A stretch of DNA of 64,000 nucleotides from Syncephalis fuscata S228. Its lineage: Eukaryota > Fungi > Zoopagomycota. The stretch lies in contig JAHLTZ010000030.1 of NCBI GenBank assembly GCA_025786725.1, positions 1-64,000 on the forward strand, in the 5' to 3' direction. The notes beneath the pieces are model-generated. The model did not search any database. It saw nothing but the letters and a program-made list of their open reading frames with translations, and had not been told where the DNA came from. Numbering within the stretch: the stretch's first letter is position 1; each line of letters begins with the position of its first letter. The position numbers were made by a program, and so were the translations under genes. Below are positions 1-17,917 of this stretch, piece by piece.

Positions 1-2559
1 CAATATAAGCCTACACAAATACTAACCAAAAGTATGTTAATTAATCAGCTATTTAATGCATAGTCAATTGTTAATTGTTAACGTTAATTTATATAGTAAT
101 GACTGGCCATTAGAAACTGTTGTCGTTTTTGCTAGCCATAATAACTAATTAGCAGTACCGTAATATATTATTAATTAAAAAAGATCAGTAATTAATGTTA
201 CATGTAGTTGCAATGTATATGCAATACTAAATATCACATTGCTAATCATCAAGCAATGCCCTAGTCTGGCGTTGTCCTATAGTTTTAGTTTTTGATACTT
301 GCTGATAATTAACACTTATATTACTGCTTCTTAATTGTTTACTATCAAATAGGCTATTAAGCTATTTTATAATAAGTGAAATAATTATATACTGTTATAT
401 GATAAGGCCTGATGAATGCACGTTTGTCTTATTTATAGGTTATACAATCTTGATAGGCTTACGTCTTGTTGTACATGTAACAAATTTGCTATTTCACAAT
501 AAAATTTACAACTTTGGCATGCCTAGCGGCAATCTAATTACTAACGCTAAGTACGGTATCTAATGACTATAATATAGCTTAATGGACACTTCTTTATTTT
601 TGTTATTCTATTTAATAGTATTAAGTATGGTGCAGGACAAAATATTATAAGTAAACACAAACTGTAAATAATAAAAGTAATTGTTATCGCGTTTTAGCTA
701 GGTTTTATTTTCATTTGTTACGTAGCAAGTGTCTACATCTTTGTGATTTACAAATATCTATTTATAATTAGTAACCAATAACAATGACACTTACTGTTCA
801 ATGTCGACCGTGTCGCTTTATCCTTTATTCGTTCTTTTCTGTTTTTCGGCACTTTTGTTTGTCGCAGCCTTATTATTAACTAGTATATATGCCTAGTTCA
901 TCCACTACATGGCTTTATTGCTAAAGATAAATATTGTTATGCTTAACAACATTAACGTACAAGCATGTAATGTTCAGTAAACACAACTATCTTCGATCTT
1001 GTAGCTCATATTTAATAGTAATACATGCAGTCGAAATAAGCAATAACATAACATCTACACACCATTTCCAACTGTAATATATAGTATATATTATTTATGA
1101 ATAAGCAACAATTTATTCAGCCATTGCGCTACTTAAATGCCGGTTTTATTATTATAGAGACATTATGCCGTCTAATTCATTCAAAAGTAATGCAGATGAT
1201 AAACGTTCTATTTAGTTATTAAAAACTGAAAACCATTATTGTGCTAATGTTATTGTACTGCTATGCTGGCCATAATACTTTTCATAGTATTTTTGTAGAT
1301 GTAGCTGATTGCCGTAGTGGCATATACATTTGTGAAAAGTTATGTTTATTATTTCTATTTGGTTAATACTTGCTAACCATTGGATAAAATAAAGCATGAG
1401 CATGGCTGAAACAACTTAATAAAATATAATTAAACGAGCTATATATTTGCTGCAAGCTTTTGCAGTTTAATAGATATAGCTGAGCTATGACTTCTTCCTG
1501 GAATAATAAAGTTATTGACTAAAGAGGCGAATAATGCAAATCATTGATTAGGATTTGATGTTTGTATAAGCTAAATAGTAGCTGTCAAACATAGATAAGC
1601 CACTTTACATGGCTACCTATACAGCAAAGAATATATTATACTAACAATATGCAGCACGTTAATTTGTTTGCATAGTATATTGATATGCTGTAATTCTTAT
1701 ACACGCAATCACAATACCAACAGTGGCCAATAAACTTTAATATAGCCTATAATCACTCATACATTTATAATCACTATCAAATGTATCTTCTATATAATTA
1801 TATTAAAAATTAGCTGGCCACAATATCTGACATTTTTGTACCGTCTAAATACATGGCACATCATTAATTATAAGTCGGCTACAAAATTTATGCTTAGTAT
1901 TGCTTGCATAAAATAATTATCTAATGCACACCGTTACATTTACAATATTATCGTATAGTTTTATTTTAAATATAGTAAGTTTTACTGTAAGTTATCTACT
2001 ATGGCAATAAAGTATAGTATTTTACGACTAAATCGCACACAGTCGATAGCTTATCCAGTACTGTTTAAAATCAACGGTGGTTATGTATATATAACAGCTA
2101 TAACACCAATACAATTTAATGCGTAAAACACAATGGTAAGCCAATAAACCTATATGAAATAAGGTTCCGACCTGAATAACCGGCTTACAGAATTCATTTG
2201 TAAAGTTTAAAGCAAAGCATTAGGAGCAAGAATAATATGTTTAGTAAGGAGATTAAATATAGAGTAGACGTTTGCTATTAAGGATTAATATATACAAACA
2301 TAAAATAACATATTGTAATAAAAACCAAACTAAATATGATAATAATAATAAATTAAAGACTAATGGTTTATTAAAAGATAAACAAGCATAAATGTATCTA
2401 CACTAAAAATGTTGCTTATGTACTACAAATATAAAGGTAACGTATACCTTTAAGCTCTATGGTCAGTAGCAATGCATAAAATAAAATATGTTAAAAATAA
2501 TGAGAAACATAAATTATATATTATGTAGAATTTTGTCATATTCATTAACATTTTAGTAT

Positions 2560-3200
2560 AGTTTGAAGGTTAGATGACTATATTTGATAATATTTGGGCA
2601 ATTGAGCTACACTTTCGTTCTATTAAACATGGAACTGGACGATAAATGGCACCAGTCATTAAAATACTCATTATCTTAGACTTGTTACTTTGTATGCATA
2701 TATCTTTTATTCACTAGTATCATTTTCATTCTATCTCACACTACTATATACCATTTATAACATACTAGACATAATTTATTCTTCATATGTTACAATTCAC
2801 TTCGTTATTCCACCTATTGTATCGTACACGCTAAAACTTTAACTCCGAGTGCCATACTTTTTATTATATATTTATACCATTATGTATTATTTTGTGCTTG
2901 TTTAGTCAAGCTTTGTCCAAAACTGTTTTACGTTTTGTTCTAGCTTTATTATTGATATTTTTTTATTATAGTTCAATTTACACACTTGCTCATGTATAAA
3001 TGCTCTAACGCCTTAACATTGCCAATCACCATTTTGGTTCGTATATTCATTATATTGTTTATTGCTTTTTTGAATAAATAAATGCTATTCAATATCGTTG
3101 TCTATTTATTTCTAGCTATATTATTTGTAACAAAATAGCTATTCTACAGTCATTTGATTACAGCTTCGCCATGTATAGCGAATATTAAATCATTATCACT
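2560..3200 (+). mobile_element. Degenerate remnant of the TIR-module/MITE family
   Basis: 2570-2700 (atgactatattt...ctattaaacatg...aaatactcattatc...gtatgcatata) resembles the module at 4860 and 21290. 2880-3130 resembles the MITE interior at 31660-31880. Confidence 0.5.
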
Positions 3201-3498
3201 ATGCATATTTATTTTTAATTATAGTATAGCTTAATTATTATTGCTGCTTTAGTAATTTCTTCTATCTTTATTACTTATTTTCTTTTTATTATTTTACTCG
3301 ACATTTAAATGACAAACACTACAATATAAACGCGTACACAGTTTTATCCATGAGTAACGGAATAGCTGGATTTTACAATTACAATTTATTTTACTTGCAT
3401 TTGTTTTGTCAAAAGCAATTTGAACGTCTTGCGTATCTACTAAGTTAAAAATACGATAAGAATACAGCTTTTAGCTATAGTGATGAGCTAGTCTATAA

Positions 3499-4241
3499 CT
3501 AGCGATGGGCTGGTTTACCGCCATCTCCACCGCCAAGATCTCTTATTGCTTGTACTGATGGTAGTGGCGGTGGAGCCGGTGTTGCATCGGTAGTCACAAG
3601 TGTATCACCTACAATACGAAATGTTGACAGTGACATGCCCGCTAGACAACTGGCTGTATCCGGTGGTGGCGATCCAAAGGTAGGCTGTGGAACAGGTAAA
3701 GCTGCCGTAGCAGCAGAAGCTGTCGCTGCCTCCATCCATAGTCCATCCCGTTGCCATCCATGGACAATTACTTTGATCTGAATAAGTAGATATCAATAGC
3801 AATTGTATTATTATTAATATGGTAATTACTATAATGGCTTCAACATATTCCATTCTTTATATTGTCTTTGTTTACATTGTTTCTATTACTTACCACGTGA
3901 CTTAGTGGGATAGGCACAGTTAATGTGCGTCGATGCCGAATAAGATGGTCATAAATAACGCCATAGTTCTCTGGAACAAATTTGCGCAGCTGTGGTGTGC
4001 AAGGCTGCGGATCATGATGGGCAGGAGGATCGTCCTTGGTGTTTGTTATATCTGAATCTGCAGTCAATGTAGGATGTGGCAGGTCTTGCATCCACTGTCT
4101 CCGCTGCTCTTCCCAGTGGCCAAGTCCAACTGCTGGCTCTTCAGCAGTTGTTTTTTTACTACTGGATTCTTTACATAGAAATTCAGTCATGCTGGCTTTA
4201 CTGCTGCAAATAGATTGTGTTTGCTCTTCGCTTAATTGCAT
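3499..4241 (-). CDS. DUF4050 / Gag1-like clamp family protein, 2 exons (4241-3894, 3777-3499), ~208 aa
   Basis: Motifs GLGHWEEQRRQW, IYDHLI...PIPLSHV and, after a GTAAGT...CAG intron, IKVIVHGWQRDGLW are typical of DUF4050. Confidence 0.8.
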
Positions 4242-4859
4242 TATAAAGGATTAAAAAATAAATGATTCGGTCGAATGTTGTAGAGTAGCAATGCAAATTA
4301 TAATACTCTTTTTCGAATAATTGAAAAGTAAATCTAGAGCAAGAAGAGAAGAAAAGGAATGAGATAAAAAGGAGTACCGTTTCTGGAAGGATTCGGCTTT
4401 TTAAAAGGCGGACTGGCTAAACGCTATTAACTACATTCCTTGAACATTCAAAAAAGAACTTGACTGCTCGGTGAAATATTATTAATTGGGAATAATTTTG
4501 TAAACTCAGTTGACTTGCCCTGATATACAAGTGCCACACCACCTGGCCGCTTTCAATTAACCTGTTTCGATATTATAGATGTTTCAGAAATCTCAAGTTT
4601 ATAGTACCGTACAATCTATTGCATACATGTTTTATTCCAACAATACATTACAACATGGTTGTACATTATTGACAGCTTATTATTTAACAGTTTTATCTAT
4701 TATGTTAATGCTAGGATCCTATATATTTGTGTTATGCTGTTTCATTTAATGTTTAATTTCAAAGTCTATAGCTTAATAGTTATTAAATAAAGTGTAATAA
4801 TCATATAACATATTGTATGCCATTTGGCATTATTATACAAATTAATTGAATTGATCATT

Positions 4860-5856
4860 GTTTAGTATGATCCGGTGGTCAAATGGCTGCATTTAATAGC
4901 ATCCAATCTATTGAACATGATGATGGGTGGTAAGCGACATCAATCATCAAATACTCATTATTGTAGCTTTATTATCCAGTATGCATATATACTCTATCTA
5001 TATCATCCCCATTCTGTCCCATACTAATATATATCATTCTATGATATACTAGATACGCTCTATTGCTTATATGTTCTAATACACTTTGTTCAATTTACTC
5101 GCTACTTTATATGCACTATGACTTTAACACCGCTCATCGTACACTTGACATCGTATATTCATTTATTATATATTATTCTATACTCGTTTGCTCTTGCTCT
5201 ATTCAGACTTAATGTCCTTTTGACGCTAGCGCTATTATTAGTGAAGCTTTGCTATTTTGCTCATTCGCTTAGTTACTTATTAGTTTATCTACATTATAAC
5301 TTTAGCACTATTGGTCGCCACTTTGTACTGTATATTCTTTATTTTGTATATTGCTATATTACATATTAGCTATACGTCGCCTAGAGTCATTATCCATTTG
5401 GTTCTAGCTCTACTACTAAAACCTTGACCTATTTCACTTCTTTCTACTCATTGTATTATATTGCTAGAACAAATACTAAAAGTATGCATAGATGTATTAC
5501 TTTATTAAACGTATGTATTAGATTGATTATCTATAGCTAATCACGGCTGAATTAGCTAAAGTCAGTTAATTATGATTATAATGGTATCCAAGTCAAGTAG
5601 TGGAGCATTTATAGGAATACAAGCTCAAAAGAAAATATATTGGTATAAAAGTGAAATGGAATATGGATAAAAACCATGTAAATAGTCATAACGCAATACT
5701 GCGCAAATATAATAGGCAGATGGTGGATATATGCATACTGGATAATCAATCTACAATAATGAGTATTTGATAATTGATGTCACTCACCACCCATCATCGT
5801 GTTCAATAGATTAGATGCATTAAATACTGGTCATTTAACCACAAATCATACCAAAT
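4860..5856. mobile_element. ~1-kb non-autonomous MITE-like element with ~135-bp imperfect terminal inverted repeats
   Basis: tttagtatgatccggtggtcaaatggctgc...attatccagtatgcatatat at 4861-4990 and its reverse complement at ~5727-5856. AT-rich non-coding interior. No TSD visible. Confidence 0.75.
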
Positions 5857-6510
5857 ATTTAATAAAACAGTATCTTTTTTCTTGCTATAATATTACATTA
5901 TTTATCTATATAGCCACATATAGAGTAATCTTTATTTCATTAAAAAATAGTTTATTTCATTATTCATATTGAAACACTTTGACACATCGTTGTAGCGTAG
6001 TTTAAACGTTTATGAATGATTCTGTTATACGCACACACATTCACAAAGAAGCATCATGAGAAATATGAAAATAGAGACACGAACAGACAGACAAACAGAC
6101 AGACACTAATACGAAGAAAGAAAGAAAGAAAGAAAATGAGGGAGAGGAAATAAGAATGCTAAAGTGATATACTATCGATTGATGAGTACGTAAAACTAGT
6201 CAACCATCTATACTCAATGATGTAGAGGATCACTTGTACTAATAGCATCTTACTTATGTCACACACACATACACTATCTGCTACACTCACAAAGACATAG
6301 GACCACATAACAACAACAACAGCTGTAACAACACAAATACACGTGCACCAATACACACGCCAAAGATGCCGTATGGAATGAAATAAATCTGCTGCAGCCC
6401 TTGGGATAAAAGGAACAAAGGAGAATAATGAACGAACAAACCGCTGTCCAGTGCTATAGGCAAATGACAACAAATACGGTAACCATATAGTAAGTTATAT
6501 TGCTATGACA

Positions 6511-8350
6511 TTACATTGGACGATAGGCATGTTGTTGGTACTCCATTACATGTGATGCATGTTGCTGTTGCTGTTGCTGTTGCTGCATTTGTTGTTGATG
6601 TTGCTGCATTTGCTGTTGTAACTGCTGCTTCTGTTGTGTCGATAGTGTTGGGTGTGAGGCAGATGTACGAAGCACTGGATAGTGTTCTCCCATACGAGGA
6701 TATAAGCCTTGTAGCATGCCTACACGTAGATGTTCCGGCACTTTTAGTACAAGATAGCATAGATAGTTATGCTCTGTCGGTGTAAGGTAGCCGTGCCACA
6801 TCGTGTCACTCTCGACCAATCGATCATATTTGGTATCATGAGAGGGGGCGGCAGCCGGTTGGGCCTTTGACTCTAGATAGACATTAGGCATTGACTTCTC
6901 GGTAGTAGGTGTCATGTTCCAATTACTATTTAACATAAGTAGATTAATAAAAATAAAGTATTGCCATTTTTGTAACTTACTAATGATAATCCGATGAAAT
7001 CGACATATTGTTTGCTGCTGTCGATGGTACTTGAGGTGTATCGGCACGAGGTATTTGTGGTAGTGTCATATTCAAGCTTGAACCCATTGCTTGAAATAGA
7101 CCAACCGTCTCGGCACTAGATAGCATCGGCTGCTGATGTGGATGACCATGCGAGTGTGCATGGTGCTGTTGGTGGTGTGTACTTGTCGTACCGGCTGCCC
7201 ATGAAGCAGTACGGACTAGACGACGTGTAGATGTTGTTTTCTATAATAGCACATAGCGTTGTGTCAATATACGTATATTGAATATTGAACAGTATGTTAT
7301 TACCTTTAATGCTTTATCGGCCACATTCCATGCATCCATAATACGGGCGGCAAACATCTTGTCGTCCTTCTTGCCCAAGGCGACAGCTGTTACGTAAACG
7401 TTATGGTGCAATAAAGCACGATTGTTGATCATGGCTTCGACTCTATTTAAAATATCTGCTTTTAACTTGCCATGGACTTTCTACTCAAACAAGATTAGCC
7501 ACTTGAATAAATAAAGCCTACTACTACTACTACTACCATTACTTACTTGATCTAATTTAAGCATTTTAAATGCTCCCATCATTTTAACTTCAGTTTCTCG
7601 ACGTAGTTTGTCAGCCATATCACCGTTAGACAAATCACGGGCAATTTCTTCAGGTGTAGTGGCTCGTCCACTTCGAGACTTGTAACCAGTTAGAATAAGA
7701 TGAAGGAGCATTTGTTTAAATGCCTTGTGTGCCAAGTCACCGGCCATTTGCGGTGAAACATCTTGATTGTCTTCTAACTGTGATGGATGATAGGCCGTAG
7801 CTTGTTGTGGCTGTTGTTGCGGCGGCTGTTGCTGTTGCATTAATGGCTGCTGTTGCATTAATGGCTGCTGCTGTGGCTGCGACGGCTGTTGTGGCTGCAT
7901 CATAAGCTGCAGTTGAGACGGCTGATGTAAATGAATAGTCTTGTGAGTTGAAGGAATAACAAACTTGACCATTGGTGGCTGCTGCTGTTGCTGTTGTTGT
8001 TGATGGTGTTGTTGTTGTTGATGATGATGATGGTGATGGTGATGTTGCTGCTGCTGCTGCTGCTGTTGATAAGGCTGTGCATGCATAGGGGGAGGCGATG
8101 AAGACGAGGAGGTTGACGAATTGGAAGATACGGAGGACGGTGATGGTGATGACATACGTATATGGTGTGCCAATGGCGAATGATTTGCATAGCTATAATT
8201 TCTTTGCACTGCAGGTGCACGTGGCCGCGTATTGGCATTTACATTTGCAAGACGCCCTTTACCACCAGATGGCATGACCATCGGCACTACAGCCTGATTA
8301 GACCAAAAGTGCATATTTGGCTGGCCACGGTGACTCATAGTATAATCCAT
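6511..8350 (-). CDS. Uncharacterised polyQ/polyH protein (family member 1), 4 exons
   Basis: Three GT-AG introns join the ORF pieces in frame (..LKLDQ|KVHGK..KALK|KTTST..DYHY|NWNMT..). One copy of the shared helical domain, plus motif YLTPTEHNYLCYLVLKVPEHLRVGMLQGLY. Confidence 0.8.
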
Positions 8351-11300
8351 ATCAACTAATATTGAGGATAATGTTGTTATTGTTGCTATAACAATTGAAA
8401 GAGAACAAAATACAAATGGCTATAGTTGTTCAAGGCGGAGTATGAATTGCTAGATCACTGTAATGAAGTATAATTTACTCCGCACCCACACACACACACA
8501 ATCACAAACAAATAATCGCTGGTTTCAAACTCCGAATAACAGACTACCCAATATTTGGTAATCAATGGCTAAAGGATAAACGCAACGATGTGTGACGTGT
8601 TGTTTGTTTAAAACAAATACGCGCAGTACAAACGAGTGTAAGTGCAACTAGAAATGGATACACAGCCACAAACGCCACAAATTCTAGAGTAGATGTGTGT
8701 ATCTATGGATATGAAAGGTAAATATCACCACACACCAATACAAATAGCTGTAATGGATCTGTCAATGAAATAGAAGTGCAATAGTAATAAAGGTTATTAT
8801 TACTTTAGCCACAATGTAACGCTCAAGGAATGATTTATGATATTGTTATGGTTATAAAGGGTATTGTTGTTGTTGTTGTTATTGTTGTTATTGTTGTATT
8901 TTTATGTAGTTGCAGTAGAAGTAGTAGTAGTTGCTGTTTTGGTGTTCAACGGTAATGGCTAGTGCTGTGTACAGCGAAAGAGAGATATACCGTCAAATGC
9001 TACGACAGGCGAAGAAGGTTCTACAATAGAAACCGTCGACAGTGTTGTTTAAACGAATATGCACGTGCGGGTGTGTAACTTGCAATAGGTTAAAATAACG
9101 CAAGCGAGTTACGCGGGATGAGTAGGTCACTGTTAGTATGAATTGTCTAATGAAAGTAGTATATGTGTTAGAAACGATAAGTAGGTTGCAGTGGTGTTGC
9201 AGGTAGCGCAGTAAAAGGAAGAAGATAGGACGAGAAAAAAGATAGAACGAGCGACCAAGGCAGCTAACAACAGAGGTGCGTGTGCGTCAACTATTGAGTG
9301 TGGATAGAGATAGAAAGAGGTGTGAAGGTCAGCGCGGTTTCAAGTATTCTTTTCGTACCGTTGCAGTTGAGTTGCAGCAGCAGCAGCTATTATCGTGAAT
9401 GGCCTAGTGTGCTGCAGCCAGGTTGTCGTTGTTGTTATTGCCGTTGCCGTTGCCACTGCTATTGTTGCTATTATTACTACACAAAAGTTGTTGCGCAGCC
9501 AATGTGTGGCGACTATGCCACTTGTACCAAACCAGAAAGGGGCACAAGGCAGTGGCGCAGGAGCGGTCATGATTGCGGAAGAATAGAGCGGCTGAAACAA
9601 GTCATCGTTGGCGACATGTGGGCATGAATGTGTGTGTGTGTGTGGATGGATGGACGGGAACGAGCGAATGAATGAATGAATAGACAGCTATGGATGGAGT
9701 TGCCTCGTACACCTGCACGCGTGGATAGGCAAATAAGGAGAGAGAGCAAAGGGGTACCTGCTCGTTCAGATACAAAAACAGAAAGGATGCGTGGAGAAGA
9801 AGCGTAATCATTCTATATGTGTGTGCGGAGAGTGTTGCCATAACTGTAATAATGTGGTAATAGCAATAGCAAAAGTAGCAGTGACTAATGCAGCTATGGG
9901 AGATGCAAGAATGAACGTGAACGCGCCATCAAAAAGTAAACGAGGGTGCATGTGGCACTTACCCTGTTGCACAGCGTATTGGCCAGGTCTGTACCTACAA
10001 TTCAAATAGGCTATGAGTGTAGACAGATAGATGGCTGGATAGGTAGATAGGTAGATAGATAGATAAAGAAGGACAAAGTAGATAGATGGATACAGCGATA
10101 CCAGCGGAATGAATACTGAATAGCCATATTTTATATAGCCGGATCCAATCAACGCACCGTAAAGGGTCATGCAGCATTGGCAACAGTGCCATTCGTTAAA
10201 TATCACATATTCTCACGTGGATTGGCATATTCAATAAGAGTTTTTTGTTAATCTAATAACCAGTAAATTGTCAGTATTTGATGATAACCACTTGTATAAT
10301 GAAGTGTCTAAATAAATGAATAGCATATTTATTACTATTAAATAATATGACTACATTATGTTTATTTCAGTAATTAATCGTATTTATATACATGCCATGT
10401 TATACAACAATTTATCACACCATAATGTAATATGTATATTATTTAGTATTAACGTTATAAATTGATGGGCAGATGCAATAGATGCCGCGACAAGCCGAAT
10501 ACGCAGTACATTATCCAAGATGCACCTCTACGTACACACGCATATTGACACATGGATGTGAACGTATCATTATTGGTCACATCATTCTCACGACAGTCTT
10601 TATGATGAGCGTTGTCATTATCATAATACTGTTGATAGTGTACCATCTTTGTATTCTGGCTATCGTTCCTTTGCTTTTGTTCTTTTGTTGTTTCATTGCA
10701 TCTTGTTTTCATTTGAGATGGATATCGATACCGGTACCGATATCATCATTGGTTCGTTGCTGCCCTTTTGTCTATGTGGACACAGTAAAGGGCATGAGTT
10801 TGAAGGGTGACGTCATGTGGTGGTGATTGCTCACGCGGATAGTTACTGGCTATAACAGCAGTAACAACAACCAACAACCATAACACTGATGCTATTCAAT
10901 GGCATCGGTCCATCAGTAAACTGGTGGATAATGCGATGCATATCGGATAGACAAGCGCCTCGCCTTGTCGCCTTCGTTTTGTTAATGCGGAACGGCATTG
11001 GTGTGTGTATGTGTATGTGACTGTTTACCAGTATCCGAACCTATAAGCTTCGGTAATTAGATGGAACACAACAACAATGCAATGTTACAGCATAGATATG
11101 ACATAACAATAAACACAACAGTTGTAACAATGACTGACATGGCAGTAGTAATTATAGATGCAGCACCAAATAATAATAATAATAAGGGCACGGACAGCAG
11201 GACAAACAACTGTTACAGCTATTAAAAGCAGAACTGGGGCCACAAAGGCACGAGAATAAACAGATTGGTGTGACCTATTGAATAATGTGGCATGTTAATA

Positions 11301-11408
11301 TGAAAGAGCAGCCTAGCTTTATTTTTATTATTTAGTTAATGACAATAATGATATAAAATAATGGATATTTATAGCTGATTCAGCCCATTCGCTTAATAAT
11401 TGTCTAGC

Positions 11409-13827
11409 TTACATCCAGCGGTGTAAAAGTGCTCGGCGTAGATGTGGTGGAATCTTCATAATTAAAAACTCCAAGTGTTCTCGTTCCAGCTCGGTTAGAT
11501 ACGCGTTTATCAACGTGGTTTCATCTAAGGTCGATGAACTCGGTGCAGGCAGCAAAGGAGATACTGCAGGTGGCTGGGCAATAGGCGGTGCTGTGCTGTG
11601 GTAACTGGATAATGTAGGTGTTGGTGTCATAGAAGCCATGTGGTTGTAGTCATAGGCAATGGCAGCTGTGGACTAGTTGCATAACCACCGCCTGATTGCA
11701 TCACTGTCATACTTGTTGATGTACCTGGTGACATCATATTGGGTAGTGTAGATATGGTGGGTGTTTGAGATTGCTGTTGTTGTTGTTGTTGTTGTAAATG
11801 TGGATTATGTTGATATTGTGGCTGTGGCTGTGGTTGTTGCTGATAATGTTGTGTAGATTGATGAAGATGCTGTTGTTGTTGTTGTTGTTGTTCTTGTAAT
11901 TGTAATGGTGATGATTGTATATGGCGTGGTACTGATGACATGGTCATATCTACATTTCTTGTATCAGTATGTTGTTGTTGTTGTTTTAATGGTGATGATT
12001 GATGCATTGCACCTTGTTTTCGTGGTGATATAACTTGTCTTGTTGGTGGTGCGTTCATTAAATTAGATGTCGTTGTTGCTCTCCTAGTGATGAATGATGA
12101 TAATCTGATTGAGCTGGTGGTGTTGATGGTGAACTCGATACACTAATGGCCGATGATGCCATAACAGTTGTTGTTGTAATATCGGATTGTATAATTGGTG
12201 TAATCATACGTTCACGTGCCTTTTCTGCATTGGCTGCACCGAGTACTGATATACTTGTAATAGATGATTTGGGTTTTGATAAAGATGATGACCGTGGTGG
12301 TGATGATGATCTATATTATATATAATAAATTAATTTATTGATTCATTATTAATTAGGAATACACTGTTTATTATAACTTACCGTTGACGTGAATAACCAT
12401 TGCTATTAGACATAATGACATCAGGTTTATCCCAGTTTGAACTAGTATCTTTCTGTGGCTTATCCCAGTTTGAACTAGTATTTTTCTGTGGTTTATCCCA
12501 ATTGGAACTAGTATTTTTTTGTGGTTTATCCCAGTTAGAGTTATTGTCTTTCTGTGGCTTATCCCAATTGGAACCAGTATCTTTCTGTGGCTTATCCCAG
12601 TTTGAACTGGTATCTTTCTGTGGCTTATCCCAGTTTGAATTGGTATCTTGTTGTGGTTTCCCCATACATCCCAGGTGTGTTTATCAGTTACTACTGTCTC
12701 GCCCCAAGAAGAAACACCAGCCGATCCTGATGATGGTGCGTTGTCGTGATGATTATTGCTACTACTATTACCATTACGTTGACGACTACGACTACGACTA
12801 TGACTGATACTGCGACTATCATTCTTATTAGACTGTTAAACCATTCATTAGCCATTATCAATATAATTAAAATGTATATTTACAGAGTATGGGTCGGCAT
12901 CCGAGTAACGTGAGTGGCTGCTTGAATCACGACCATTTCTACTAGTGTCCCGTGTACTTTCCGTGTTCCTTGATGATGAATATTGATTATTTTCCCAATA
13001 TCTTTGATAACTTGGATCCTATTTCGATAATTAAGTTAAGTTAAATTAATATCGCTAAATACATAACTACATACTTTTACTAATTGATGTGCTTTTGGAT
13101 ATGCTGACTCCAACACCGTTGCAAATCGTGGATCACTAGTTTTAAACTTTTCAATAACATCTTCCATGACAGTAAAAAAGTTCTTGGATGCTTTCATCTT
13201 ATATTTAAGCGAATTGATTATACTATCTTGTTCTTTGCCCGATACACGCTATTACAACACAGCATTTAGTCTTTATGCTCAATTACTGGCCCCTTGTCAC
13301 CTTCTCTACTAACTCACCCGTGTTATGCGTAATTGGCCCAGTGTATAGCGAACTCTCTCGCCTAGCTTGTGCATAAAGTTTAATAGACGTGCTTTTGACA
13401 TATCCTCGATCAATCGATCGGTATCAGCTGGATCGCCTTTTTTAACATAGTCCGCCAATAAAGTATTATAGATTAGCTGTACAATGATTGCATGCTCTAG
13501 TTGAGTGCTGGTAATGGCTGAATTTTCGTCATGGCTATTCGATGAATGCGGATCAATGTAGCGAGAACGTTCCTTTCTTTGCAGCAATGAGCCCGACTCG
13601 TCCTCTTCAATCCAATTCGAGGGCCGTTTTCCAAAGCCTCCATTGATTGCCGAGGCTAATGGTGCGCCATAGTCGTTTTTTGAATAGCCAAAACCGCTGT
13701 CATTGGCACTGCTACCATGCTTACTGTGGGTCGACGACGATGTTAAATCTACGGTAAATCCAGTCATTTGTATAGCGCCATCTTCGGGATCGGGTGTACG
13801 CCTATACTCTCCTGAATAGTCAGACAT
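11409..13827 (-). CDS. Uncharacterised S/Q-rich protein with Trp repeats (family member 2), 5 exons, three apparent 1-bp deletions
   Basis: Starts MSDYSGEY, with canonical introns, the shared helical domain and C-terminus YLTELEREHLEFLIMKIPPHLRRALLHRWM. The frame slips by -1 near 12660, ~12085 and ~11640 (sequencing error or recent pseudogene). Confidence 0.7.
12420..12665 (-). repeat. 30-bp coding tandem repeat, ~8 units, encoding (NWDKPQKDTS)n
   Basis: The unit ttatcccagtttgaactagtatctttctgtgg recurs every 30 bp. Confidence 0.95.
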
Positions 13828-14614
13828 TGATGAGGTAGCGTCTTTAAGATATTTAGTAAGATAGCCGTGGATTGCTATCACTCTTGCTGTTGTTTGGTAG
13901 TCTTAAATACGTGTGGCTATATATGCTTACGCATGCATACAACTGGGAAAGCACAGCGATTTACAAATATGACGTATTTTTCTTGGCACTTTTGTAGCAG
14001 TCCTGCCTAAACGTGTACGGTTGGCACTAACTAACTATAAGCTAAATAGCTAAAACTAAACTTGGTCAATATCCAAAAGAACTAAAGCGTGTTAAACCGA
14101 GAAAGAGAAAATGGGTAAATAAAGAGAAATATTTTCACGACACTTGGATCATTACACTCCATTAAAACGGCGATCAAATAGCAATAATCATTATAGGCAT
14201 CATTTAGAGCAAGCGCAATGATATATTAGTATGTATATATATATACTAATTAATCATTTGAATAGTTAATCTATATATAGTATTAATGTAGAGTATATCT
14301 GTCTAATATAACAGATCAATAAGCTAAAAGTACTAGACGGGATGTATGTGTAGTAAAGGGGCATTTGTTAATCCAATATTAACCAATCTAATGGTCATTG
14401 TAATTAATTAACTACTATTACAGTATATTAATTCATTAAACACTTTAACTAAGTAATTTAACAAAAAAATAGTACTGTTTACCTAATAGTATGTAACACA
14501 TATCTAAACTCAATGGTTATAATAATAATAATAGTAACGAGATATCAACACTATTTGATAAAAACACGTTTTTTTGTTTTCCACCTTCAAACTATTTCTC
14601 ATTTGTATACAGTC

Positions 14615-17600
14615 ATGGCAAGTGTTTCTAACGAGCTTGTTTCTACTGAGCCGTTTTCACCAGGTAACAACTAATATAAATTTATAATAAACTATATGTA
14701 TATATAGTATGTATGCTAGTTAGCTAGTTAGTTAGATTAGCTATTGGTATAAAGTAGCCCTTTACTATACAGTTTGTATAGATTTATCAAATAGCACTTC
14801 ATGACTCTACTACATAGTAGACATAATAGCATAACGTGTATATACATACAAGATAGCACAAAATAACTTGTAGTATTTGTTTATTACTTAGATTCGGCGG
14901 CATCGCCAGATCTCGATAATGTTACAAGCACAGACATATCAAACGTACTAAGTGTACCAAGTAAAACAATGGTAGAAGTCGTTATTCCTCAAACTAGCCT
15001 CATTAATGCGGCCAACCAAGCAAAACCTATGGTGTATTCAAAACAAGATCCAGAATTGGAACAGGATAACCAGGGCAATGTCATAGAGGACAACTACGAC
15101 TTGGGCTTTTCAGATGTATTGTTTATAACGCTCAATTGGATCTTAATACATGTACTGGCCCAAACATATTATGCCATTGATGGCAGAATAGTGGCTGAAC
15201 AAGTAATAGCCGAACATTTAAGCAACGGTACTATTGCCGGAATTGTATCAAAAAGTATTGGATTACGCATTGTAACGGCATTGGAACAATTAGCATTAAC
15301 AGATGTATGTCATAGATATAACAATAAAGATATACTAATGATACAGTAAATAATCTATTAGACGGTAAAAGCCTCGAGTGATGAAGAAATAGACACTGAG
15401 AAGCAATTAGAAGAACATATTATTAGCCGTATTAATAATCGACAGATATTTCTACAATTATTAGCAAGTGGTATAAGAGATGCAGGCAATGCAGTACCCA
15501 CTGAACTATCCACTCGAATTACTAATGCCACACAAATAGCATTGAATTCTATGGCAAGTAGATGAGTGATGGATAGGCAGTTGATTAATATCGAGTATGA
15601 TATAGACGGATACTGATCAACCATGGCCACGTAAAGTGTATATTGGTAAACAGTCAGAATGGCTGCATCCTGAAATAAAACAGCTTAATCAAGAATACAA
15701 TACAGTAAGTTGATAGATTCTATTTAATAACATGATTCCATTGTATTTATTATTTTTACTTTAGTTATTTACTACAATCCCTCCACCTTATTATGATATG
15801 GTTGATTCAGACACATTAAGGTAAGTATTGTATGAATGTCATGTAAATAGTACATATTTATCATATATAATAGAACTCGTTTCATTGTTGAGCGTGCAAA
15901 TCCCAATGCACTACCTCGTGGTGATGAAGATCTTGAATATTCTATTGGTGACCATGATGTAGAACAATCTCCAGATATTAGAAACGACGAAGAACATAGT
16001 GATTATAGCTATCATAGTGTTCATAGTGATCATAGTGATGATGAAGAACAAATTGATAGTAAAAGCGACAATGGCAGTCAGAAAGCAGCATGTTTTGTAG
16101 CATTATCATCAAATGATTTAGATGACAAAGTACTAAATACCGATGTTGATTTAGAAAAGATATGGATGCACGCATTTAGACTAGAAATTGTAGAGACTTA
16201 TTTATCTATGGCACCGAAAGAGCTAAATAATATAGTTGCCTATGATATTCGCAGTACATCGCTTATAGATCGCATTAAATCGCGTGTTGATAAACAATTT
16301 AATGAGCTAGTTAAATTAGCCAATATTATTATGGTGAGTTTAGTTGTATATATTTATTAAATAGTAGTTAACAACGCTTGTTTAATAGAATGGACAAGAT
16401 ATATCGGTATTAAGAACACAAGTAGATATTGAATTGGATAAGATGCAATCACAGCCTAGTGCCATTATAACTTTATTAGAAAAGTTAAATACTGCTTTTA
16501 ATTGGTCGGAGAATGAGACAAGAGTAGTTCAAGCAATTCAAAAGATAGCAGCCCAGTTAAATCCTCAATTATATGTAAGTTAATTAATCGGTATTAATAT
16601 TTGTATTAACCCTATTTAATAAGATGTCATCACCATTGCCATCACCAGCACCATTTCCAAATATATCAAGATCGCCATCGCCATCGTCTTTATCTTTATC
16701 ATTTAAACGGGACAGATTGCTGTCAACACCACCACCACCGCTTTTAAAAAGCCCCTTAATTCTCAAACAACACCGTAAGTAGTAGTAATAGAAATGGGAA
16801 TATTAATAGTACTTCTAGTGGCAGTGTTCAATCATTAAACATTGCAGTTAACACATTGAAATAATACTAACTTGTAACTACATTGTAGAACTAATATACA
16901 AGAAATAGCGGATGTTGTACTTGTTGAAAAAATGGAAAGTATAATTCGTTCACACTATTATAGAAAAGAACATTTTACGCAATCAACAAACAATATAATT
17001 GAAGATCTACATTCAAACGAGCTTGGACGTCGTTTACGAATCAATATAGATAGAACCATCAAGCGTTTATCTGAAGCAGGTACAATCGAGAGGGTAGGTC
17101 ATCAGATAGACATCAAACAGCTGTAACTAACTTGATACAGGATTTGTCATCTTCTGAGATGAGCAATTTAGTAACTTTAATTACTCATCAGTCGATGAAA
17201 AAGGCCATTGTGAATCGTTTGTTGGGTGCTGCTATGAAGAATATAAAGCAAAATCCCCTGCTTAAATCATTCTGCAATGAAGTGGACCGATTACGACATT
17301 TCTCTTACAGAAATTATAATGTGATTTAATAATACGCATAATAACAATAGTTTACTAATAATGGCTGATTATAGGCATCATTGAATTCAGGTACTAAAAC
17401 AAACAAACAATTAATATTAAATCCAAATTTTGCACAACAACGATTGCAACAGAAAAAGGAAGAGGAAGATCGGAGAATACAGAAAATACAGAAAATACAA
17501 TATATACAAGAACAGCTAGAACAGCAAATAAAAATAAAAGAACAAGAACAGTTAGATCAGCAAATGAAACAAAAAGAGCAAGAACAACAAATAAGAGACA

Positions 17601-17917
17601 AGCAGCGGTTAAAAGAGCAAGAACAACAATTACAACAGGAATTGTTACAACGGCGTACATCGTCTAATTATGCCAATACTACTACTATACAGTCCAATTC
17701 ATACAAAGTTGAATCAGATTTGATTATGGCTCAACTGCAAGCAGTACAGCATAAACAAGTGACAAATCAGATAACACAGTCTATTCAACCTACTATACCA
17801 CCACCATCCATGGATTTAACGCAATTTCTTAATCAAACAGAAGTCATGCATCTAACTGCGATACTTGACCGACTTCCGCCTCATCTTCGTCGTCGGTTCC
17901 TTGAACGTTGGGTGTAA
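14615..17917 (+). CDS. Uncharacterised multi-exon protein (family member 3) with three copies of the shared helical domain and a Q/E/K coiled coil
   Basis: ATG at 14615; about 11 exons joined in frame by short introns; ends FLNQTEVMHLTAILDRLPPHLRRRFLERWV. Some exon borders are uncertain. Confidence 0.75.

What the first reader, a model, noticed from the sequence alone, without database searches (positions are those of the whole stretch)
6511..17917. Three adjacent genes form an unrecognised paralogue family sharing a ~125-aa helical domain with conserved introns
Seen: gene 1 has AHKAFKQMLLHLILTGY..EEIARDLSNGDMADKLRR..AFKMLKLDQ|..MINNRALL. Gene 3 repeat 1 has LFITLNWILIHVLAQTY..QVIAEHLSNGTIAGIVSK..ALEQLALTD|..RINNRQIF. 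Gene 2 has IIVQLIYNTLLADY..RLIEDMSKARL..TLGQLRITR|. Gene 3 carries two further copies (IVAYDIRSTSL..IIM| and NIIEDLHSNEL..TIER|). All five copies have a phase-0 intron mid-domain and another intron about 60 codons later. The rest of each protein is Q/H/S-rich and disordered. Genes 2 and 3 are head-to-head. Inference: an old, highly diverged tandem cluster encoding a possibly undescribed domain family, perhaps heteromerising transcriptional or RNA regulators. A mating or compatibility locus role is speculation.
Basis: partly seen in the sequence, partly recalled or inferred. Interest (0 to 1): 0.8.

Follow-up and report, generated by a model that had tools for sequence, protein, structure and literature searches.

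The report
Syncephalis-only helical-domain gene trio
Three neighbouring genes of the mycoparasitic fungus Syncephalis fuscata encode a small protein family built on a ~125-residue all-helical module (five copies in all) that matches no described domain or solved fold and was found only in Syncephalis; what it does is unknown, most likely a nuclear regulatory complex.

Summary
The observation largely holds. Window 6511-17917 carries three intron-containing genes: G1 and G2 on the minus strand, G3 on the plus strand, with G2 and G3 head-to-head. By database names the organism is Syncephalis fuscata.

G1, G2 and the first G3 copy share a ~125-aa domain (profile-profile P from 2e-7 to 8e-4). The third G3 copy is modestly significant (P 0.003; 0 of 60 shuffles reach it). 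The middle G3 copy is not significant by sequence (P 0.2). It fits only by exon structure and by an AlphaFold model that was given the family alignment.

All five copies have a phase-0 intron at the same alignment column, followed by a 58-65-codon exon. cDNA contigs confirm the G2 introns. They also show that G2's three frame breaks are assembly errors.

An undescribed, genus-restricted domain family is supported. The regulator and heteromer ideas remain inference. Nothing supports a mating locus.

The scan noted the same stretch once more in this genome, but not on other DNA.

The parts
6511..8350 (-). Gene 1 (G1): 4 exons (8350-7547, 7480-7304, 7240-6981, 6925-6511), 551 aa, with an intact reading frame.
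   Evidence: The model has canonical GT..AG introns of 66, 63 and 55 nt. The orthologue L007 keeps exons 1-3 and the intron positions. RNA evidence was not obtained for this gene.
7304..7744 (-). G1 helical domain: N-half 7547-7744, phase-0 intron 7481-7546, C-half exon 7304-7480 (59 codons). The domain is basic (pI 9.8).
   Evidence: It is 98% (N-half) and 93% (C-half) identical at the amino-acid level to L007, while third codon positions are only 46-47% identical. hhalign to G3a gives P 2.4e-7.
6691..6810 (-). G1 copy of the shared C-terminal motif (Y-L-T-x-x-E-x-x-x-L ... P-x-H-L-R). Here it is followed by a poly-Q tail.
   Evidence: Alignment A7. The own-genome profile search gave E 2.4e-19, and only the three cluster genes matched.
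11409..13827 (-). Gene 2 (G2): expressed and spliced. The genome sequence has three 1-nt homopolymer deletions, near 12659, 12066 and 11640, that break the frame. The cDNA is intact, giving a product of about 730 aa.
   Evidence: cDNA contigs show joints at 13318/13248, 13074/13017, 12884/12832 and 12382/12310. They also carry an extra A at 12659, an extra A at 12066 and an extra C at 11640. The public model P0003 (483 aa) stops at the second break.
13075..13515 (-). G2 helical domain: N-half 13318-13515, phase-0 intron 13249-13317, C-half exon 13075-13248 (58 codons). The domain is basic (pI 9.6).
   Evidence: hhalign to G3a gives P 5.8e-5 and to G1 P 7.9e-4. Both flanking introns are confirmed by cDNA. 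Orthologues are P0007, L013 and L015.
12382..12690 (-). G2 Trp-periodic repeat (33 bp x 7, unit N-W-D-K-P-Q-K-D-T-S-S), preceded by two WG motifs and an R/S/H-rich stretch.
   Evidence: Tandem Repeats Finder reports 12427-12656, period 33, 7 copies. WG and NWD motifs are also present in the S. pseudoplumigaleata orthologue P0007.
11412..11528 (-). G2 C-terminal motif, at the very C-terminus.
   Evidence: Alignment A7. E 4e-21 in the own-genome profile search. It is 68% identical to L014.
13828..14614 (.). Divergent intergenic region of about 790 bp between the G2 and G3 start codons, presumed to be a bidirectional promoter.
   Evidence: cDNA contigs reach 14091 on the G2 side, and an adapter-tagged contig end lies at 14585 on the G3 side. 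The head-to-head order is kept in L013 and L015.
14615..17917 (+). Gene 3 (G3): 11 exons, about 830 aa, with three domain copies, a coiled-coil-like K/E/Q region and the C-terminal motif. There is probably one more 1-nt assembly deletion in exon 8 (16707-16775).
   Evidence: The model is. The public model P0002 (826 aa) agrees except at intron 3 and around exon 8. cDNA confirms intron 1, 14663/14892. No contigs were laid over 15000-17399.
15107..15556 (+). G3 copy a: N-half 15107-15304, phase-0 intron, C-half 15362-15556. The copy is acidic (pI 4.9).
   Evidence: Smith-Waterman z 14 against the G1 N-half. hhalign P 2.4e-7. The AlphaFold model has pLDDT 78 and seven helices. It is 73% identical to L013.
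16136..16574 (+). G3 copy b: N-half 16136-16333, phase-0 intron, C-half exon 16389-16574 (62 codons). The copy is acidic (pI 5.1). It is a probable, not proven, member of the family.
   Evidence: Sequence similarity is not significant (P 0.2). The intron column and exon size match the other copies. The AlphaFold model built with the family alignment has pLDDT 82 and the same helix order. It shares 11 of its 50 top sub-threshold VIA hits with copy a.
16890..17320 (+). G3 copy c: N-half 16890-17093, phase-0 intron, C-half exon 17141-17320 (60 codons). The copy is basic (pI 9.6).
   Evidence: hhalign against the merged G1+G3a+G2 profile gives P 0.0026 over 95 collinear columns, with 0 of 60 column shuffles reaching it. 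Orthologous copies occur in L013, L015 and L016.
17798..17914 (+). G3 C-terminal motif, at the very C-terminus.
   Evidence: Alignment A7. E 6e-17 in the own-genome search. It is 77% identical to L013.

Best explanation
**Shown**
- The region is a three-gene paralogue cluster restricted to the genus Syncephalis (Zoopagomycota).
- Each protein carries one copy (G1, G2) or three copies (G3) of a two-exon, ~125-residue all-helical module.
- The model of that module has an N-terminal three-helix unit and a C-terminal three-helix unit joined by a flexible link, with an H2-turn-H3 motif I-A-x-x-L-S-N-G.
- Each protein also carries a ~35-residue C-terminal motif found nowhere else in the genome.
- The module arose by duplication of the two-exon unit, both between genes and inside G3.
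- It is under strong purifying selection, and G2 is transcribed and spliced.

**Inferred**
- The proteins are nuclear regulatory or scaffold proteins that act together.
- G2 and G3 would be co-expressed from a conserved divergent promoter.
- The basic copies (G1, G2, G3c) would contact nucleic acid or acidic partners.
- The acidic copies (G3a, G3b) would pair with the basic ones.
- The shared C-terminal amphipathic motif would dock all three proteins onto one common partner.
- The disordered Q/H/S, RS-like, W-repeat and coiled-coil parts would recruit other factors.
For: **Family and duplication**
- Pairwise and profile-profile statistics support the family.
- The phase-0 intron sits at an identical column, followed by 58-65-codon exons.
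- Orthologues keep the introns.

**Expression**
- Spliced cDNA contigs cover G2 and the 5' end of G3.

**Selection**
- The G1 domain is 96% identical to its orthologue while third codon positions are 46% identical. The flanking disordered parts are only about 40% identical.

**Restriction**
- Only 9 proteins matched among 1.84 billion. All except one 3,546-aa hit that I did not inspect are Syncephalis proteins or unnamed contigs that carry the same genes.
- The genome holds no further copy of the domain or the motif.

**No known family or fold**
-.

**Acting together (circumstantial)**
- The head-to-head G2-G3 pair is conserved in three species at saturating divergence.
- The split between basic and acidic copies is conserved in orthologues.
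Against: - No experiment and no homology links the module to nucleic-acid binding, nuclear localisation or heteromerisation.
- There is no clear NLS in G1.
- Helix 3 of the acidic copies is not basic.
- Copy b has no sequence support.
- The AlphaFold models rest on shallow alignments of 21-22 rows. The copy b model used the family alignment, so it is not independent.
- The apparent genus restriction may partly reflect how few Zoopagales genomes are public, and the exon-split domain.
- RNA evidence is missing for G1 and for most of G3.
Confidence: 0.55

Rival explanations
1. The module is a very diverged member of a known helix-turn-helix superfamily, that is, an HTH followed by a helical bundle in the manner of TetR-like regulators or eukaryotic winged-helix factors. 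On this reading the three genes are a lineage-specific family of sequence-specific DNA-binding transcription factors, not a new fold.
For: - The N-half models as H1, hairpin, H2, turn, long H3, with a conserved I-A-x-x-L-S-N-G turn.
- H3 is basic in G1, G2, G3b and G3c.
- The G3c N-half gives weak Pfam hits to HTH_Crp_2 and AbiEi_4 (E about 0.1).
- Q/H-rich regions are typical of activators.
Against: - Foldseek TM is 0.17-0.25.
- T3SS-gatekeeper-like bundles recur just as often in the same lists.
- TetR chains are very numerous in the PDB, so recurrence is expected.
- There is no wing after H3.
- The HTH Pfam hits are single-member and non-significant.
Confidence: 0.25
2. Only G1, G2 and the first G3 copy (perhaps also copy c) are homologous. 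The middle G3 segment is an unrelated helical stretch, and its resemblance comes from amphipathic-helix composition plus a chance intron coincidence.
For: - hhalign gives P 0.2, and 4 of 60 shuffles reach the score.
- Pairwise z is at most 3.2 against any copy.
- The own-genome profile search did not retrieve it.
- The AlphaFold model of copy b used the family alignment, so it is not independent.
Against: - Copy b has a phase-0 intron at the same alignment column, then a 62-codon exon that ends in a second phase-0 intron, as the other copies do.
- The spacing from the conserved Tyr to the intron is 45 residues, against 44-46 in the others.
- G3 has about one intron per 250 nt, so two such coincidences are unlikely. 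My rough estimate is below 1e-3.
- Copy b is conserved as a unit in L013.
- The model has pLDDT 82 and the same helix order.
Confidence: 0.15
3. The cluster is a mating-type or compatibility locus whose genes are idiomorphic regulators.
For: Only the general picture fits: clustered, divergently transcribed, lineage-specific putative regulators.
Against: - Haplotig C226 is 99% identical over window 513-10537 and has one SNP in G1.
- The cDNA differs from the genome at only two bases over G2.
- There are no HMG or homeodomain hits.
- Ordinary orthologues in the same arrangement occur in other species.
Confidence: 0.03

Closest known systems
TetR-like and other HTH-plus-helical-bundle regulators
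   Different: There is no sequence or profile match, and TM is about 0.2. The cluster is eukaryotic, its genes are intron-split, and the module sits inside long disordered proteins and is triplicated in one of them. No ligand-binding domain of TetR size is present.
Divergently transcribed partner-gene pairs (for example fungal histone H2A-H2B and H3-H4 pairs)
   Same: Two paralogous genes are kept head-to-head across species, which in known cases secures stoichiometric co-expression of proteins that heterodimerise through a shared helical fold. Here too, basic and acidic versions of one fold are paired.
   Different: This is an analogy only. The module is not a histone fold (no match), and dimerisation is untested.
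GW/WG 'Argonaute-hook' platform proteins (GW182, Tas3 and similar); relevant to G2 only
   Same: G2 has about ten Trp residues in a disordered S/N/D/T/K-rich context, including two WG motifs that are also present in the S. pseudoplumigaleata orthologue.
   Different: Most repeats read N-W-D rather than G-W or W-G. There is no homology to any known hook protein, and Argonaute binding is untested.
Orphan (taxonomically restricted) gene families of early-diverging fungi
   Same: The members are annotated 'hypothetical protein', have no Pfam domain, and are found only within one genus.
   Different: Unlike most orphans, this family has a well-folded predicted domain, internal triplication with conserved introns, near-invariance of one member at saturating synonymous divergence, and conserved gene order.

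Membership tests
Any Pfam-A domain family | The HMM score reaches the family's gathering threshold, or at least the same family is hit repeatedly across members. | tested here: not met
   Exon by exon, the full proteins P0002, P0003 and P0007, and all 21 members of A4 at E up to 10. Nothing is near a cutoff, and no family is hit by more than 2 members.
Any protein with a solved structure (by sequence) | A significant profile match to a PDB chain. | tested here: not met
   hmmsearch of the A4 profile against 177,635 PDB sequences. The best matches are designed helical repeats at E 0.004-0.006 and about 20 bits.
Any solved or Atlas fold (by shape) | A Foldseek E-value of 0.001 or better, a VIA Z clearly above the helical-bundle noise (above about 13), or TM above 0.5. 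| tested here: not met
Helix-turn-helix or winged-helix DNA-binding domains | A tri-helical core whose H2-turn-H3 superposes on known HTHs, with a basic recognition helix and (for winged helix) a beta wing after H3. | tested here: inconclusive
HTH or other nucleic-acid-binding domains | Demonstrated DNA or RNA binding. | not testable with these tools
   This needs EMSA, a binding array or CLIP.
Argonaute-hook (GW/WG) proteins (G2 only) | Multiple GW or WG motifs in a disordered, small-residue-rich region. | tested here: inconclusive
   There are two WG motifs plus eight N-W-D repeats in S. fuscata, and WG x2 plus N-W-D in P0007. The motif context is only partly canonical.
Argonaute-hook (GW/WG) proteins (G2 only) | Physical binding to an Argonaute PIWI domain. 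| not testable with these tools
   This needs a pull-down or co-immunoprecipitation.
Fungal mating-type or compatibility locus | Deeply diverged idiomorphic alleles at one locus. | tested here: not met
   The only allelic sequence available (C226) is 99% identical, with one SNP in G1. G2 and G3 are not covered by a second haplotype, so the test is partial.
Fungal mating-type or compatibility locus | It encodes HMG, homeodomain or alpha-box regulators (in Mucoromycota and Zoopagomycota: sexP/sexM HMG flanked by tptA and rnhA). | tested here: not met
   No such Pfam hit in any cluster protein.

The most novel reading that the evidence does not exclude
The three proteins form a Syncephalis-specific hetero-oligomeric, nucleic-acid-binding complex built on a previously undescribed helical fold. 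G2's RS-like and Trp-repeat region recruits Argonaute or RNA-processing factors. The complex would then be a lineage-invented small-RNA or chromatin effector, functionally comparable to RITS-type assemblies, in an obligate mycoparasite.
Probability: 0.1. Interest if true: 0.65.

Novelty: categorically new. Interest (0 to 1): 0.4.

Why it matters
**What was gained**
- If the fold is truly new, this adds a domain family to the catalogue from Zoopagomycota, a fungal phylum with almost no experimental biology.
- The history is clear: a two-exon module was duplicated between genes and triplicated within one gene.
- One member is conserved at histone-like levels, which points to an essential, lineage-invented function in an obligate mycoparasite.

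**Practical result**
- The public gene model of G2 (483 aa) is truncated by assembly errors and lacks the conserved C-terminus.
- The same kind of homopolymer deletion probably affects other genes of this assembly.

**Limits**
- Taxonomically restricted 'hypothetical' families are common.
- Without a function, the finding is of moderate interest.
- 'New' here means that no family or fold was detected with shallow alignments and medium-confidence models. It does not mean a demonstrated new mechanism.

Tried and rejected
**Family and structure searches that found nothing**
- Pfam, on exons, on full proteins, and on all alignment members at a permissive threshold.
- A PDB sequence profile search.
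- ESM Atlas by features for the G3a and G2 domains. No usable hit, and Atlas structure neighbours of P0007 had TM at most 0.45.
- Foldseek against the PDB, VIA wide and Atlas shape searches on two models. All were below the noise level.

**Searches for more relatives**
- Word-index protein searches with the G1 domain, the G3 C-terminal motif and the whole-domain profile returned only Syncephalis-type fragments or the query itself.
- Own-genome searches for further domain or motif copies found none.

**Other negatives**
- Rfam over window 1-22000 found nothing.
- A literature search for the species name found no paper that deals with these genes.

**Steps that failed or were left out**
- A combined copy b plus copy c alignment for AlphaFold misplaced the fragment rows, so I dropped it.
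- Adding the L016 copy b to the profile was abandoned because its splice model was ambiguous.
G1 was searched exon by exon only, and its joined search was left out.
- For G2 and G3 I used the stored database proteins P0002, P0003 and P0007.
- Joined domain sequences were built from stored files only inside local scripts, for pairwise and hhalign statistics.

**Rejected readings**
- G2 as a pseudogene: the cDNA restores all three frames.
- Divergent alleles at G1: the apparent 94% match on C226 is a 1-nt indel artefact.


Full report
**What is in the sequence**

The window is AT-rich eukaryotic DNA (GC about 0.29-0.43) with short GT..AG introns.

I rebuilt the three genes from the raw sequence.
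- G1 lies on the minus strand, with exons 8350-7547, 7480-7304, 7240-6981 and 6925-6511. It encodes 551 aa and its frame is intact.
- G2 lies on the minus strand, from the ATG at 13827 to the stop at 11409.
- G3 lies on the plus strand, 14615-17917, with 11 exons.
- G2 and G3 are head-to-head, about 790 bp apart.

Database names identify the organism as Syncephalis fuscata. P0002 (KAI9592903.1, 826 aa) is the public model of G3. P0003 (KAI9592902.1, 483 aa) is a truncated public model of G2. Both are 'hypothetical protein'.

**Transcription and the frame breaks in G2**

Downstream of exon 3, G2 changes frame three times without any intron signal. Each change needs one extra base in a homopolymer.

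The only public run that holds the region consists of spliced cDNA contigs. It shows joints at 13318/13248, 13074/13017, 12884/12832 and 12382/12310. It also carries one extra base at exactly 12659 (A), 12066 (A) and 11640 (C).

G2 is therefore expressed, spliced as modelled, and intact. The genome has homopolymer deletions, and the public protein model stops at the second one.

The same cDNA set confirms G3 intron 1 (14663/14892) and places a contig end with adapter sequence at 14585.

G3 exon 8 needs the same kind of -1 correction somewhere in 16707-16775 to join exon 9 in frame. No contig was laid over 15000-17399, so this is a prediction.

**Is the shared domain real?**

I defined each copy as the ~66 residues before the phase-0 intron plus the following exon.

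- Smith-Waterman scores with 300 shuffles:
  - G1 vs G3a N-half: z 14.
  - G1 vs G2 joined: z 5.7.
  - G3b and G3c reach at most about z 3 against any other copy.
- I then added orthologues from other species: L007, L013, L014/P0007 and L015.
- hhalign between small sub-family profiles:
  - G1 vs G3a: P 2.4e-7 over 111 columns.
  - G3a vs G2: P 5.8e-5 over 104 columns.
  - G1 vs G2: P 7.9e-4 over 118 columns.
- The merged G1+G3a+G2 profile against G3c gives P 0.0026 over 95 collinear columns. None of 60 column-shuffled controls reaches this score.
- Against G3b it gives P 0.2, and 4 of 60 controls reach the score.

So three copies are clearly homologous. Copy c is supported modestly. Copy b is not supported by sequence.

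**Exon structure as independent evidence**

In the unconstrained MAFFT alignment of full-length rows (A4), the mid-domain intron falls between the same two columns in all five copies and is phase 0 in all.

The next exon is 59, 58, 65, 62 and 60 codons long. The closing intron is phase 0 at the same column in four copies, and within one codon of it in G3a.

The distance from the one invariant residue (a Tyr at the end of helix 1) to the intron is 44-46 residues in all five copies.

Orthologues keep these introns.

G3 has about one intron per 250 nt of coding sequence. Two extra copies each matching at two boundaries is therefore very unlikely by chance; my rough estimate is well below 1e-3.

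This is the main argument that copy b belongs to the family.

**Predicted structures**

- AlphaFold2 on copy a, with a 21-row family alignment, gave pLDDT 78 and pTM 0.66.
  - The model has helix 1, a small hairpin, helices 2 and 3 joined by the conserved S-N-G turn, a short helix 4, and three further helices.
  - Confidence dips at the junction that coincides with the intron.
- Copy b, with a 22-row family alignment, gave pLDDT 82 and pTM 0.65.
  - It has six helices in the same order.
  - It lacks the hairpin and the short helix 4.
  - This model is not independent of the family alignment.
- The two models share 11 of their top 50 sub-threshold VIA neighbours out of 48,161 chains. That agrees with a common architecture.

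**Comparison with what is known**

- Pfam gives nothing for single exons, for the full proteins, or for any of the 21 alignment members, even at E up to 10.
- A profile search of all PDB sequences gives only designed helical repeats at about 20 bits.
- Foldseek against the PDB: best E 0.75 (copy a) and 0.45 (copy b), with TM about 0.2-0.3.
- Atlas shape search: TM at most 0.41. Atlas feature searches: no usable hit.
- The only recurrent themes below threshold are TetR-type regulators, aligned from their N-terminal helix-turn-helix, and type-III-secretion gatekeeper bundles. Neither is convincing.

Within the limits of shallow alignments and medium-confidence models, the module matches no described family or fold.

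**Distribution**

- A full HMMER search of 1.84 billion representative proteins with the N-half profile found nine proteins:
  - the S. fuscata G3 and G2 models;
  - a G2 orthologue of S. pseudoplumigaleata;
  - five unnamed metagenome or SRA fragments (P0001, P0004, P0006, P0008 and P0009);
  - one 3,546-aa protein (P0005) with nine short matches, which I did not fetch and take for a repeat artefact.
- The contigs of four of those fragments, and of the S. pseudoplumigaleata orthologue, carry the same genes.
- Word-index searches with the G1 domain, the C-terminal motif and the whole-domain profile added nothing.
- Two metagenome scans were blank.
- In the 29.4-Mb genome itself, neither the domain nor the C-terminal motif occurs outside the cluster. 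The one exception is a 10-kb haplotig, C226.

**Selection and gene order**

- The G1 domain is 98% (N-half) and 93% (C-half) identical to its metagenomic orthologue. Third codon positions are 46-47% identical, which means saturated. The flanking disordered regions are only about 40% identical.
- G3 copy a and the C-terminal motifs are 73-81% identical to L013. Copies b and c are 26-46% identical.
- The G2-G3 head-to-head arrangement recurs in L013. It also recurs in L015, where the divergent partner carries a G1/G2-like N-half and the G2-type N-terminus.
- The domain copies fall into a basic group and an acidic group. G1, G2 and G3c have pI 9.6-9.8. G3a and G3b have pI 4.9-5.1. The split is conserved in orthologues.

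**Interpretation**

Shown:
- a genus-restricted, selected paralogue family, transcribed at least for G2 and the 5' end of G3;
- a family built from a duplicated two-exon helical module plus a private C-terminal motif.

Inferred, with low confidence:
- The three proteins work together as nuclear regulators or scaffolds.
- The conserved divergent promoter suggests stoichiometric co-expression of G2 and G3.
- The basic and acidic versions of one fold suggest heterotypic pairing, or nucleic-acid binding by the basic copies.
- Several features are typical of transcription and RNA-processing factors: the Q/H/S-rich regions, the RS-like regions, the Trp-repeat region of G2, and the coiled-coil-like region of G3.

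The helix-turn-helix reading of the N-half remains a live rival.

The mating-locus idea has no support:
- The haplotig is 99% identical and has one SNP in G1. The apparent 94% protein identity came from a 1-nt indel.
- No HMG or homeodomain is present.
- Orthologues are ordinary.

G1 was searched exon by exon, and its joined search was left out.
- G2 and G3 were searched through stored database proteins.
- Joined domain sequences were assembled from stored files only inside local scripts, for statistics.
- Read laying was given 6,000 letters.

**Verdict**

Copy b rests on exon structure rather than on sequence. The 'undescribed domain family' reading is supported, and function remains open.

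Interest is moderate. This is a clean example of a lineage-invented, strongly constrained domain family, but one without a known role.

Noticed in passing
window 11640, 12066, 12659 (and probably 16707-16775): The genome assembly lacks single bases in homopolymers that the cDNA contigs contain. As a result, the public G2 protein model (483 aa) is truncated and one 'intron' in it is invented. Other genes of this assembly are likely to be affected in the same way.
   Followed up: yes
window 12382-12690: G2 carries a 33-bp x 7 tandem repeat that encodes N-W-D-K-P-Q-K-D-T-S-S units. It is preceded by two WG motifs and an R/S/H-rich (RS-like) stretch. WG and NWD motifs also occur in the S. pseudoplumigaleata orthologue, so this may be an Argonaute-hook-like platform.
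   Followed up: partly
G000:C226 (L006) versus window 513-10537: A 9,973-bp contig is a 99.0% identical haplotig. It differs by 28 SNPs, clustered at window 2000-2500 and 3500-5000, and by 84 indel columns, mostly in repeats. Only one SNP falls in G1.
   Followed up: yes
L014 / P0007 (S. pseudoplumigaleata KZ990025.1): The public 829-aa model fuses the G2 orthologue to a downstream, unrelated gene. The G2 C-terminal motif is cut in the middle by a mispredicted intron, although the genomic sequence encodes the full motif at L014:2821-2937.
   Followed up: partly
window 7304-7744 versus L007: The G1 domain is conserved at a histone-like level (about 96% amino-acid identity) across a divergence that has saturated synonymous sites. 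This is far more than G2 or G3, which are 40-73% identical over the same kind of distance.
   Followed up: yes
window 14585: A cDNA contig ends here with Illumina adapter sequence, 30 nt upstream of the G3 start codon. This is a likely transcription start of G3. G2-side contigs extend to about 14091.
   Followed up: no
window 8351-11408: The intergenic stretch between G1 and G2 is long (about 3 kb) and rich in microsatellites. It has strong GC skew, no long ORF and no Rfam match.
   Followed up: partly
L016 1-560: In a GC-richer relative (an SRA contig), copy b of the G3 orthologue seems to have a shorter helix 3 and a differently placed intron. It retains a D-I-I-N-G motif like the family's S-N-G turn.
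   Followed up: partly
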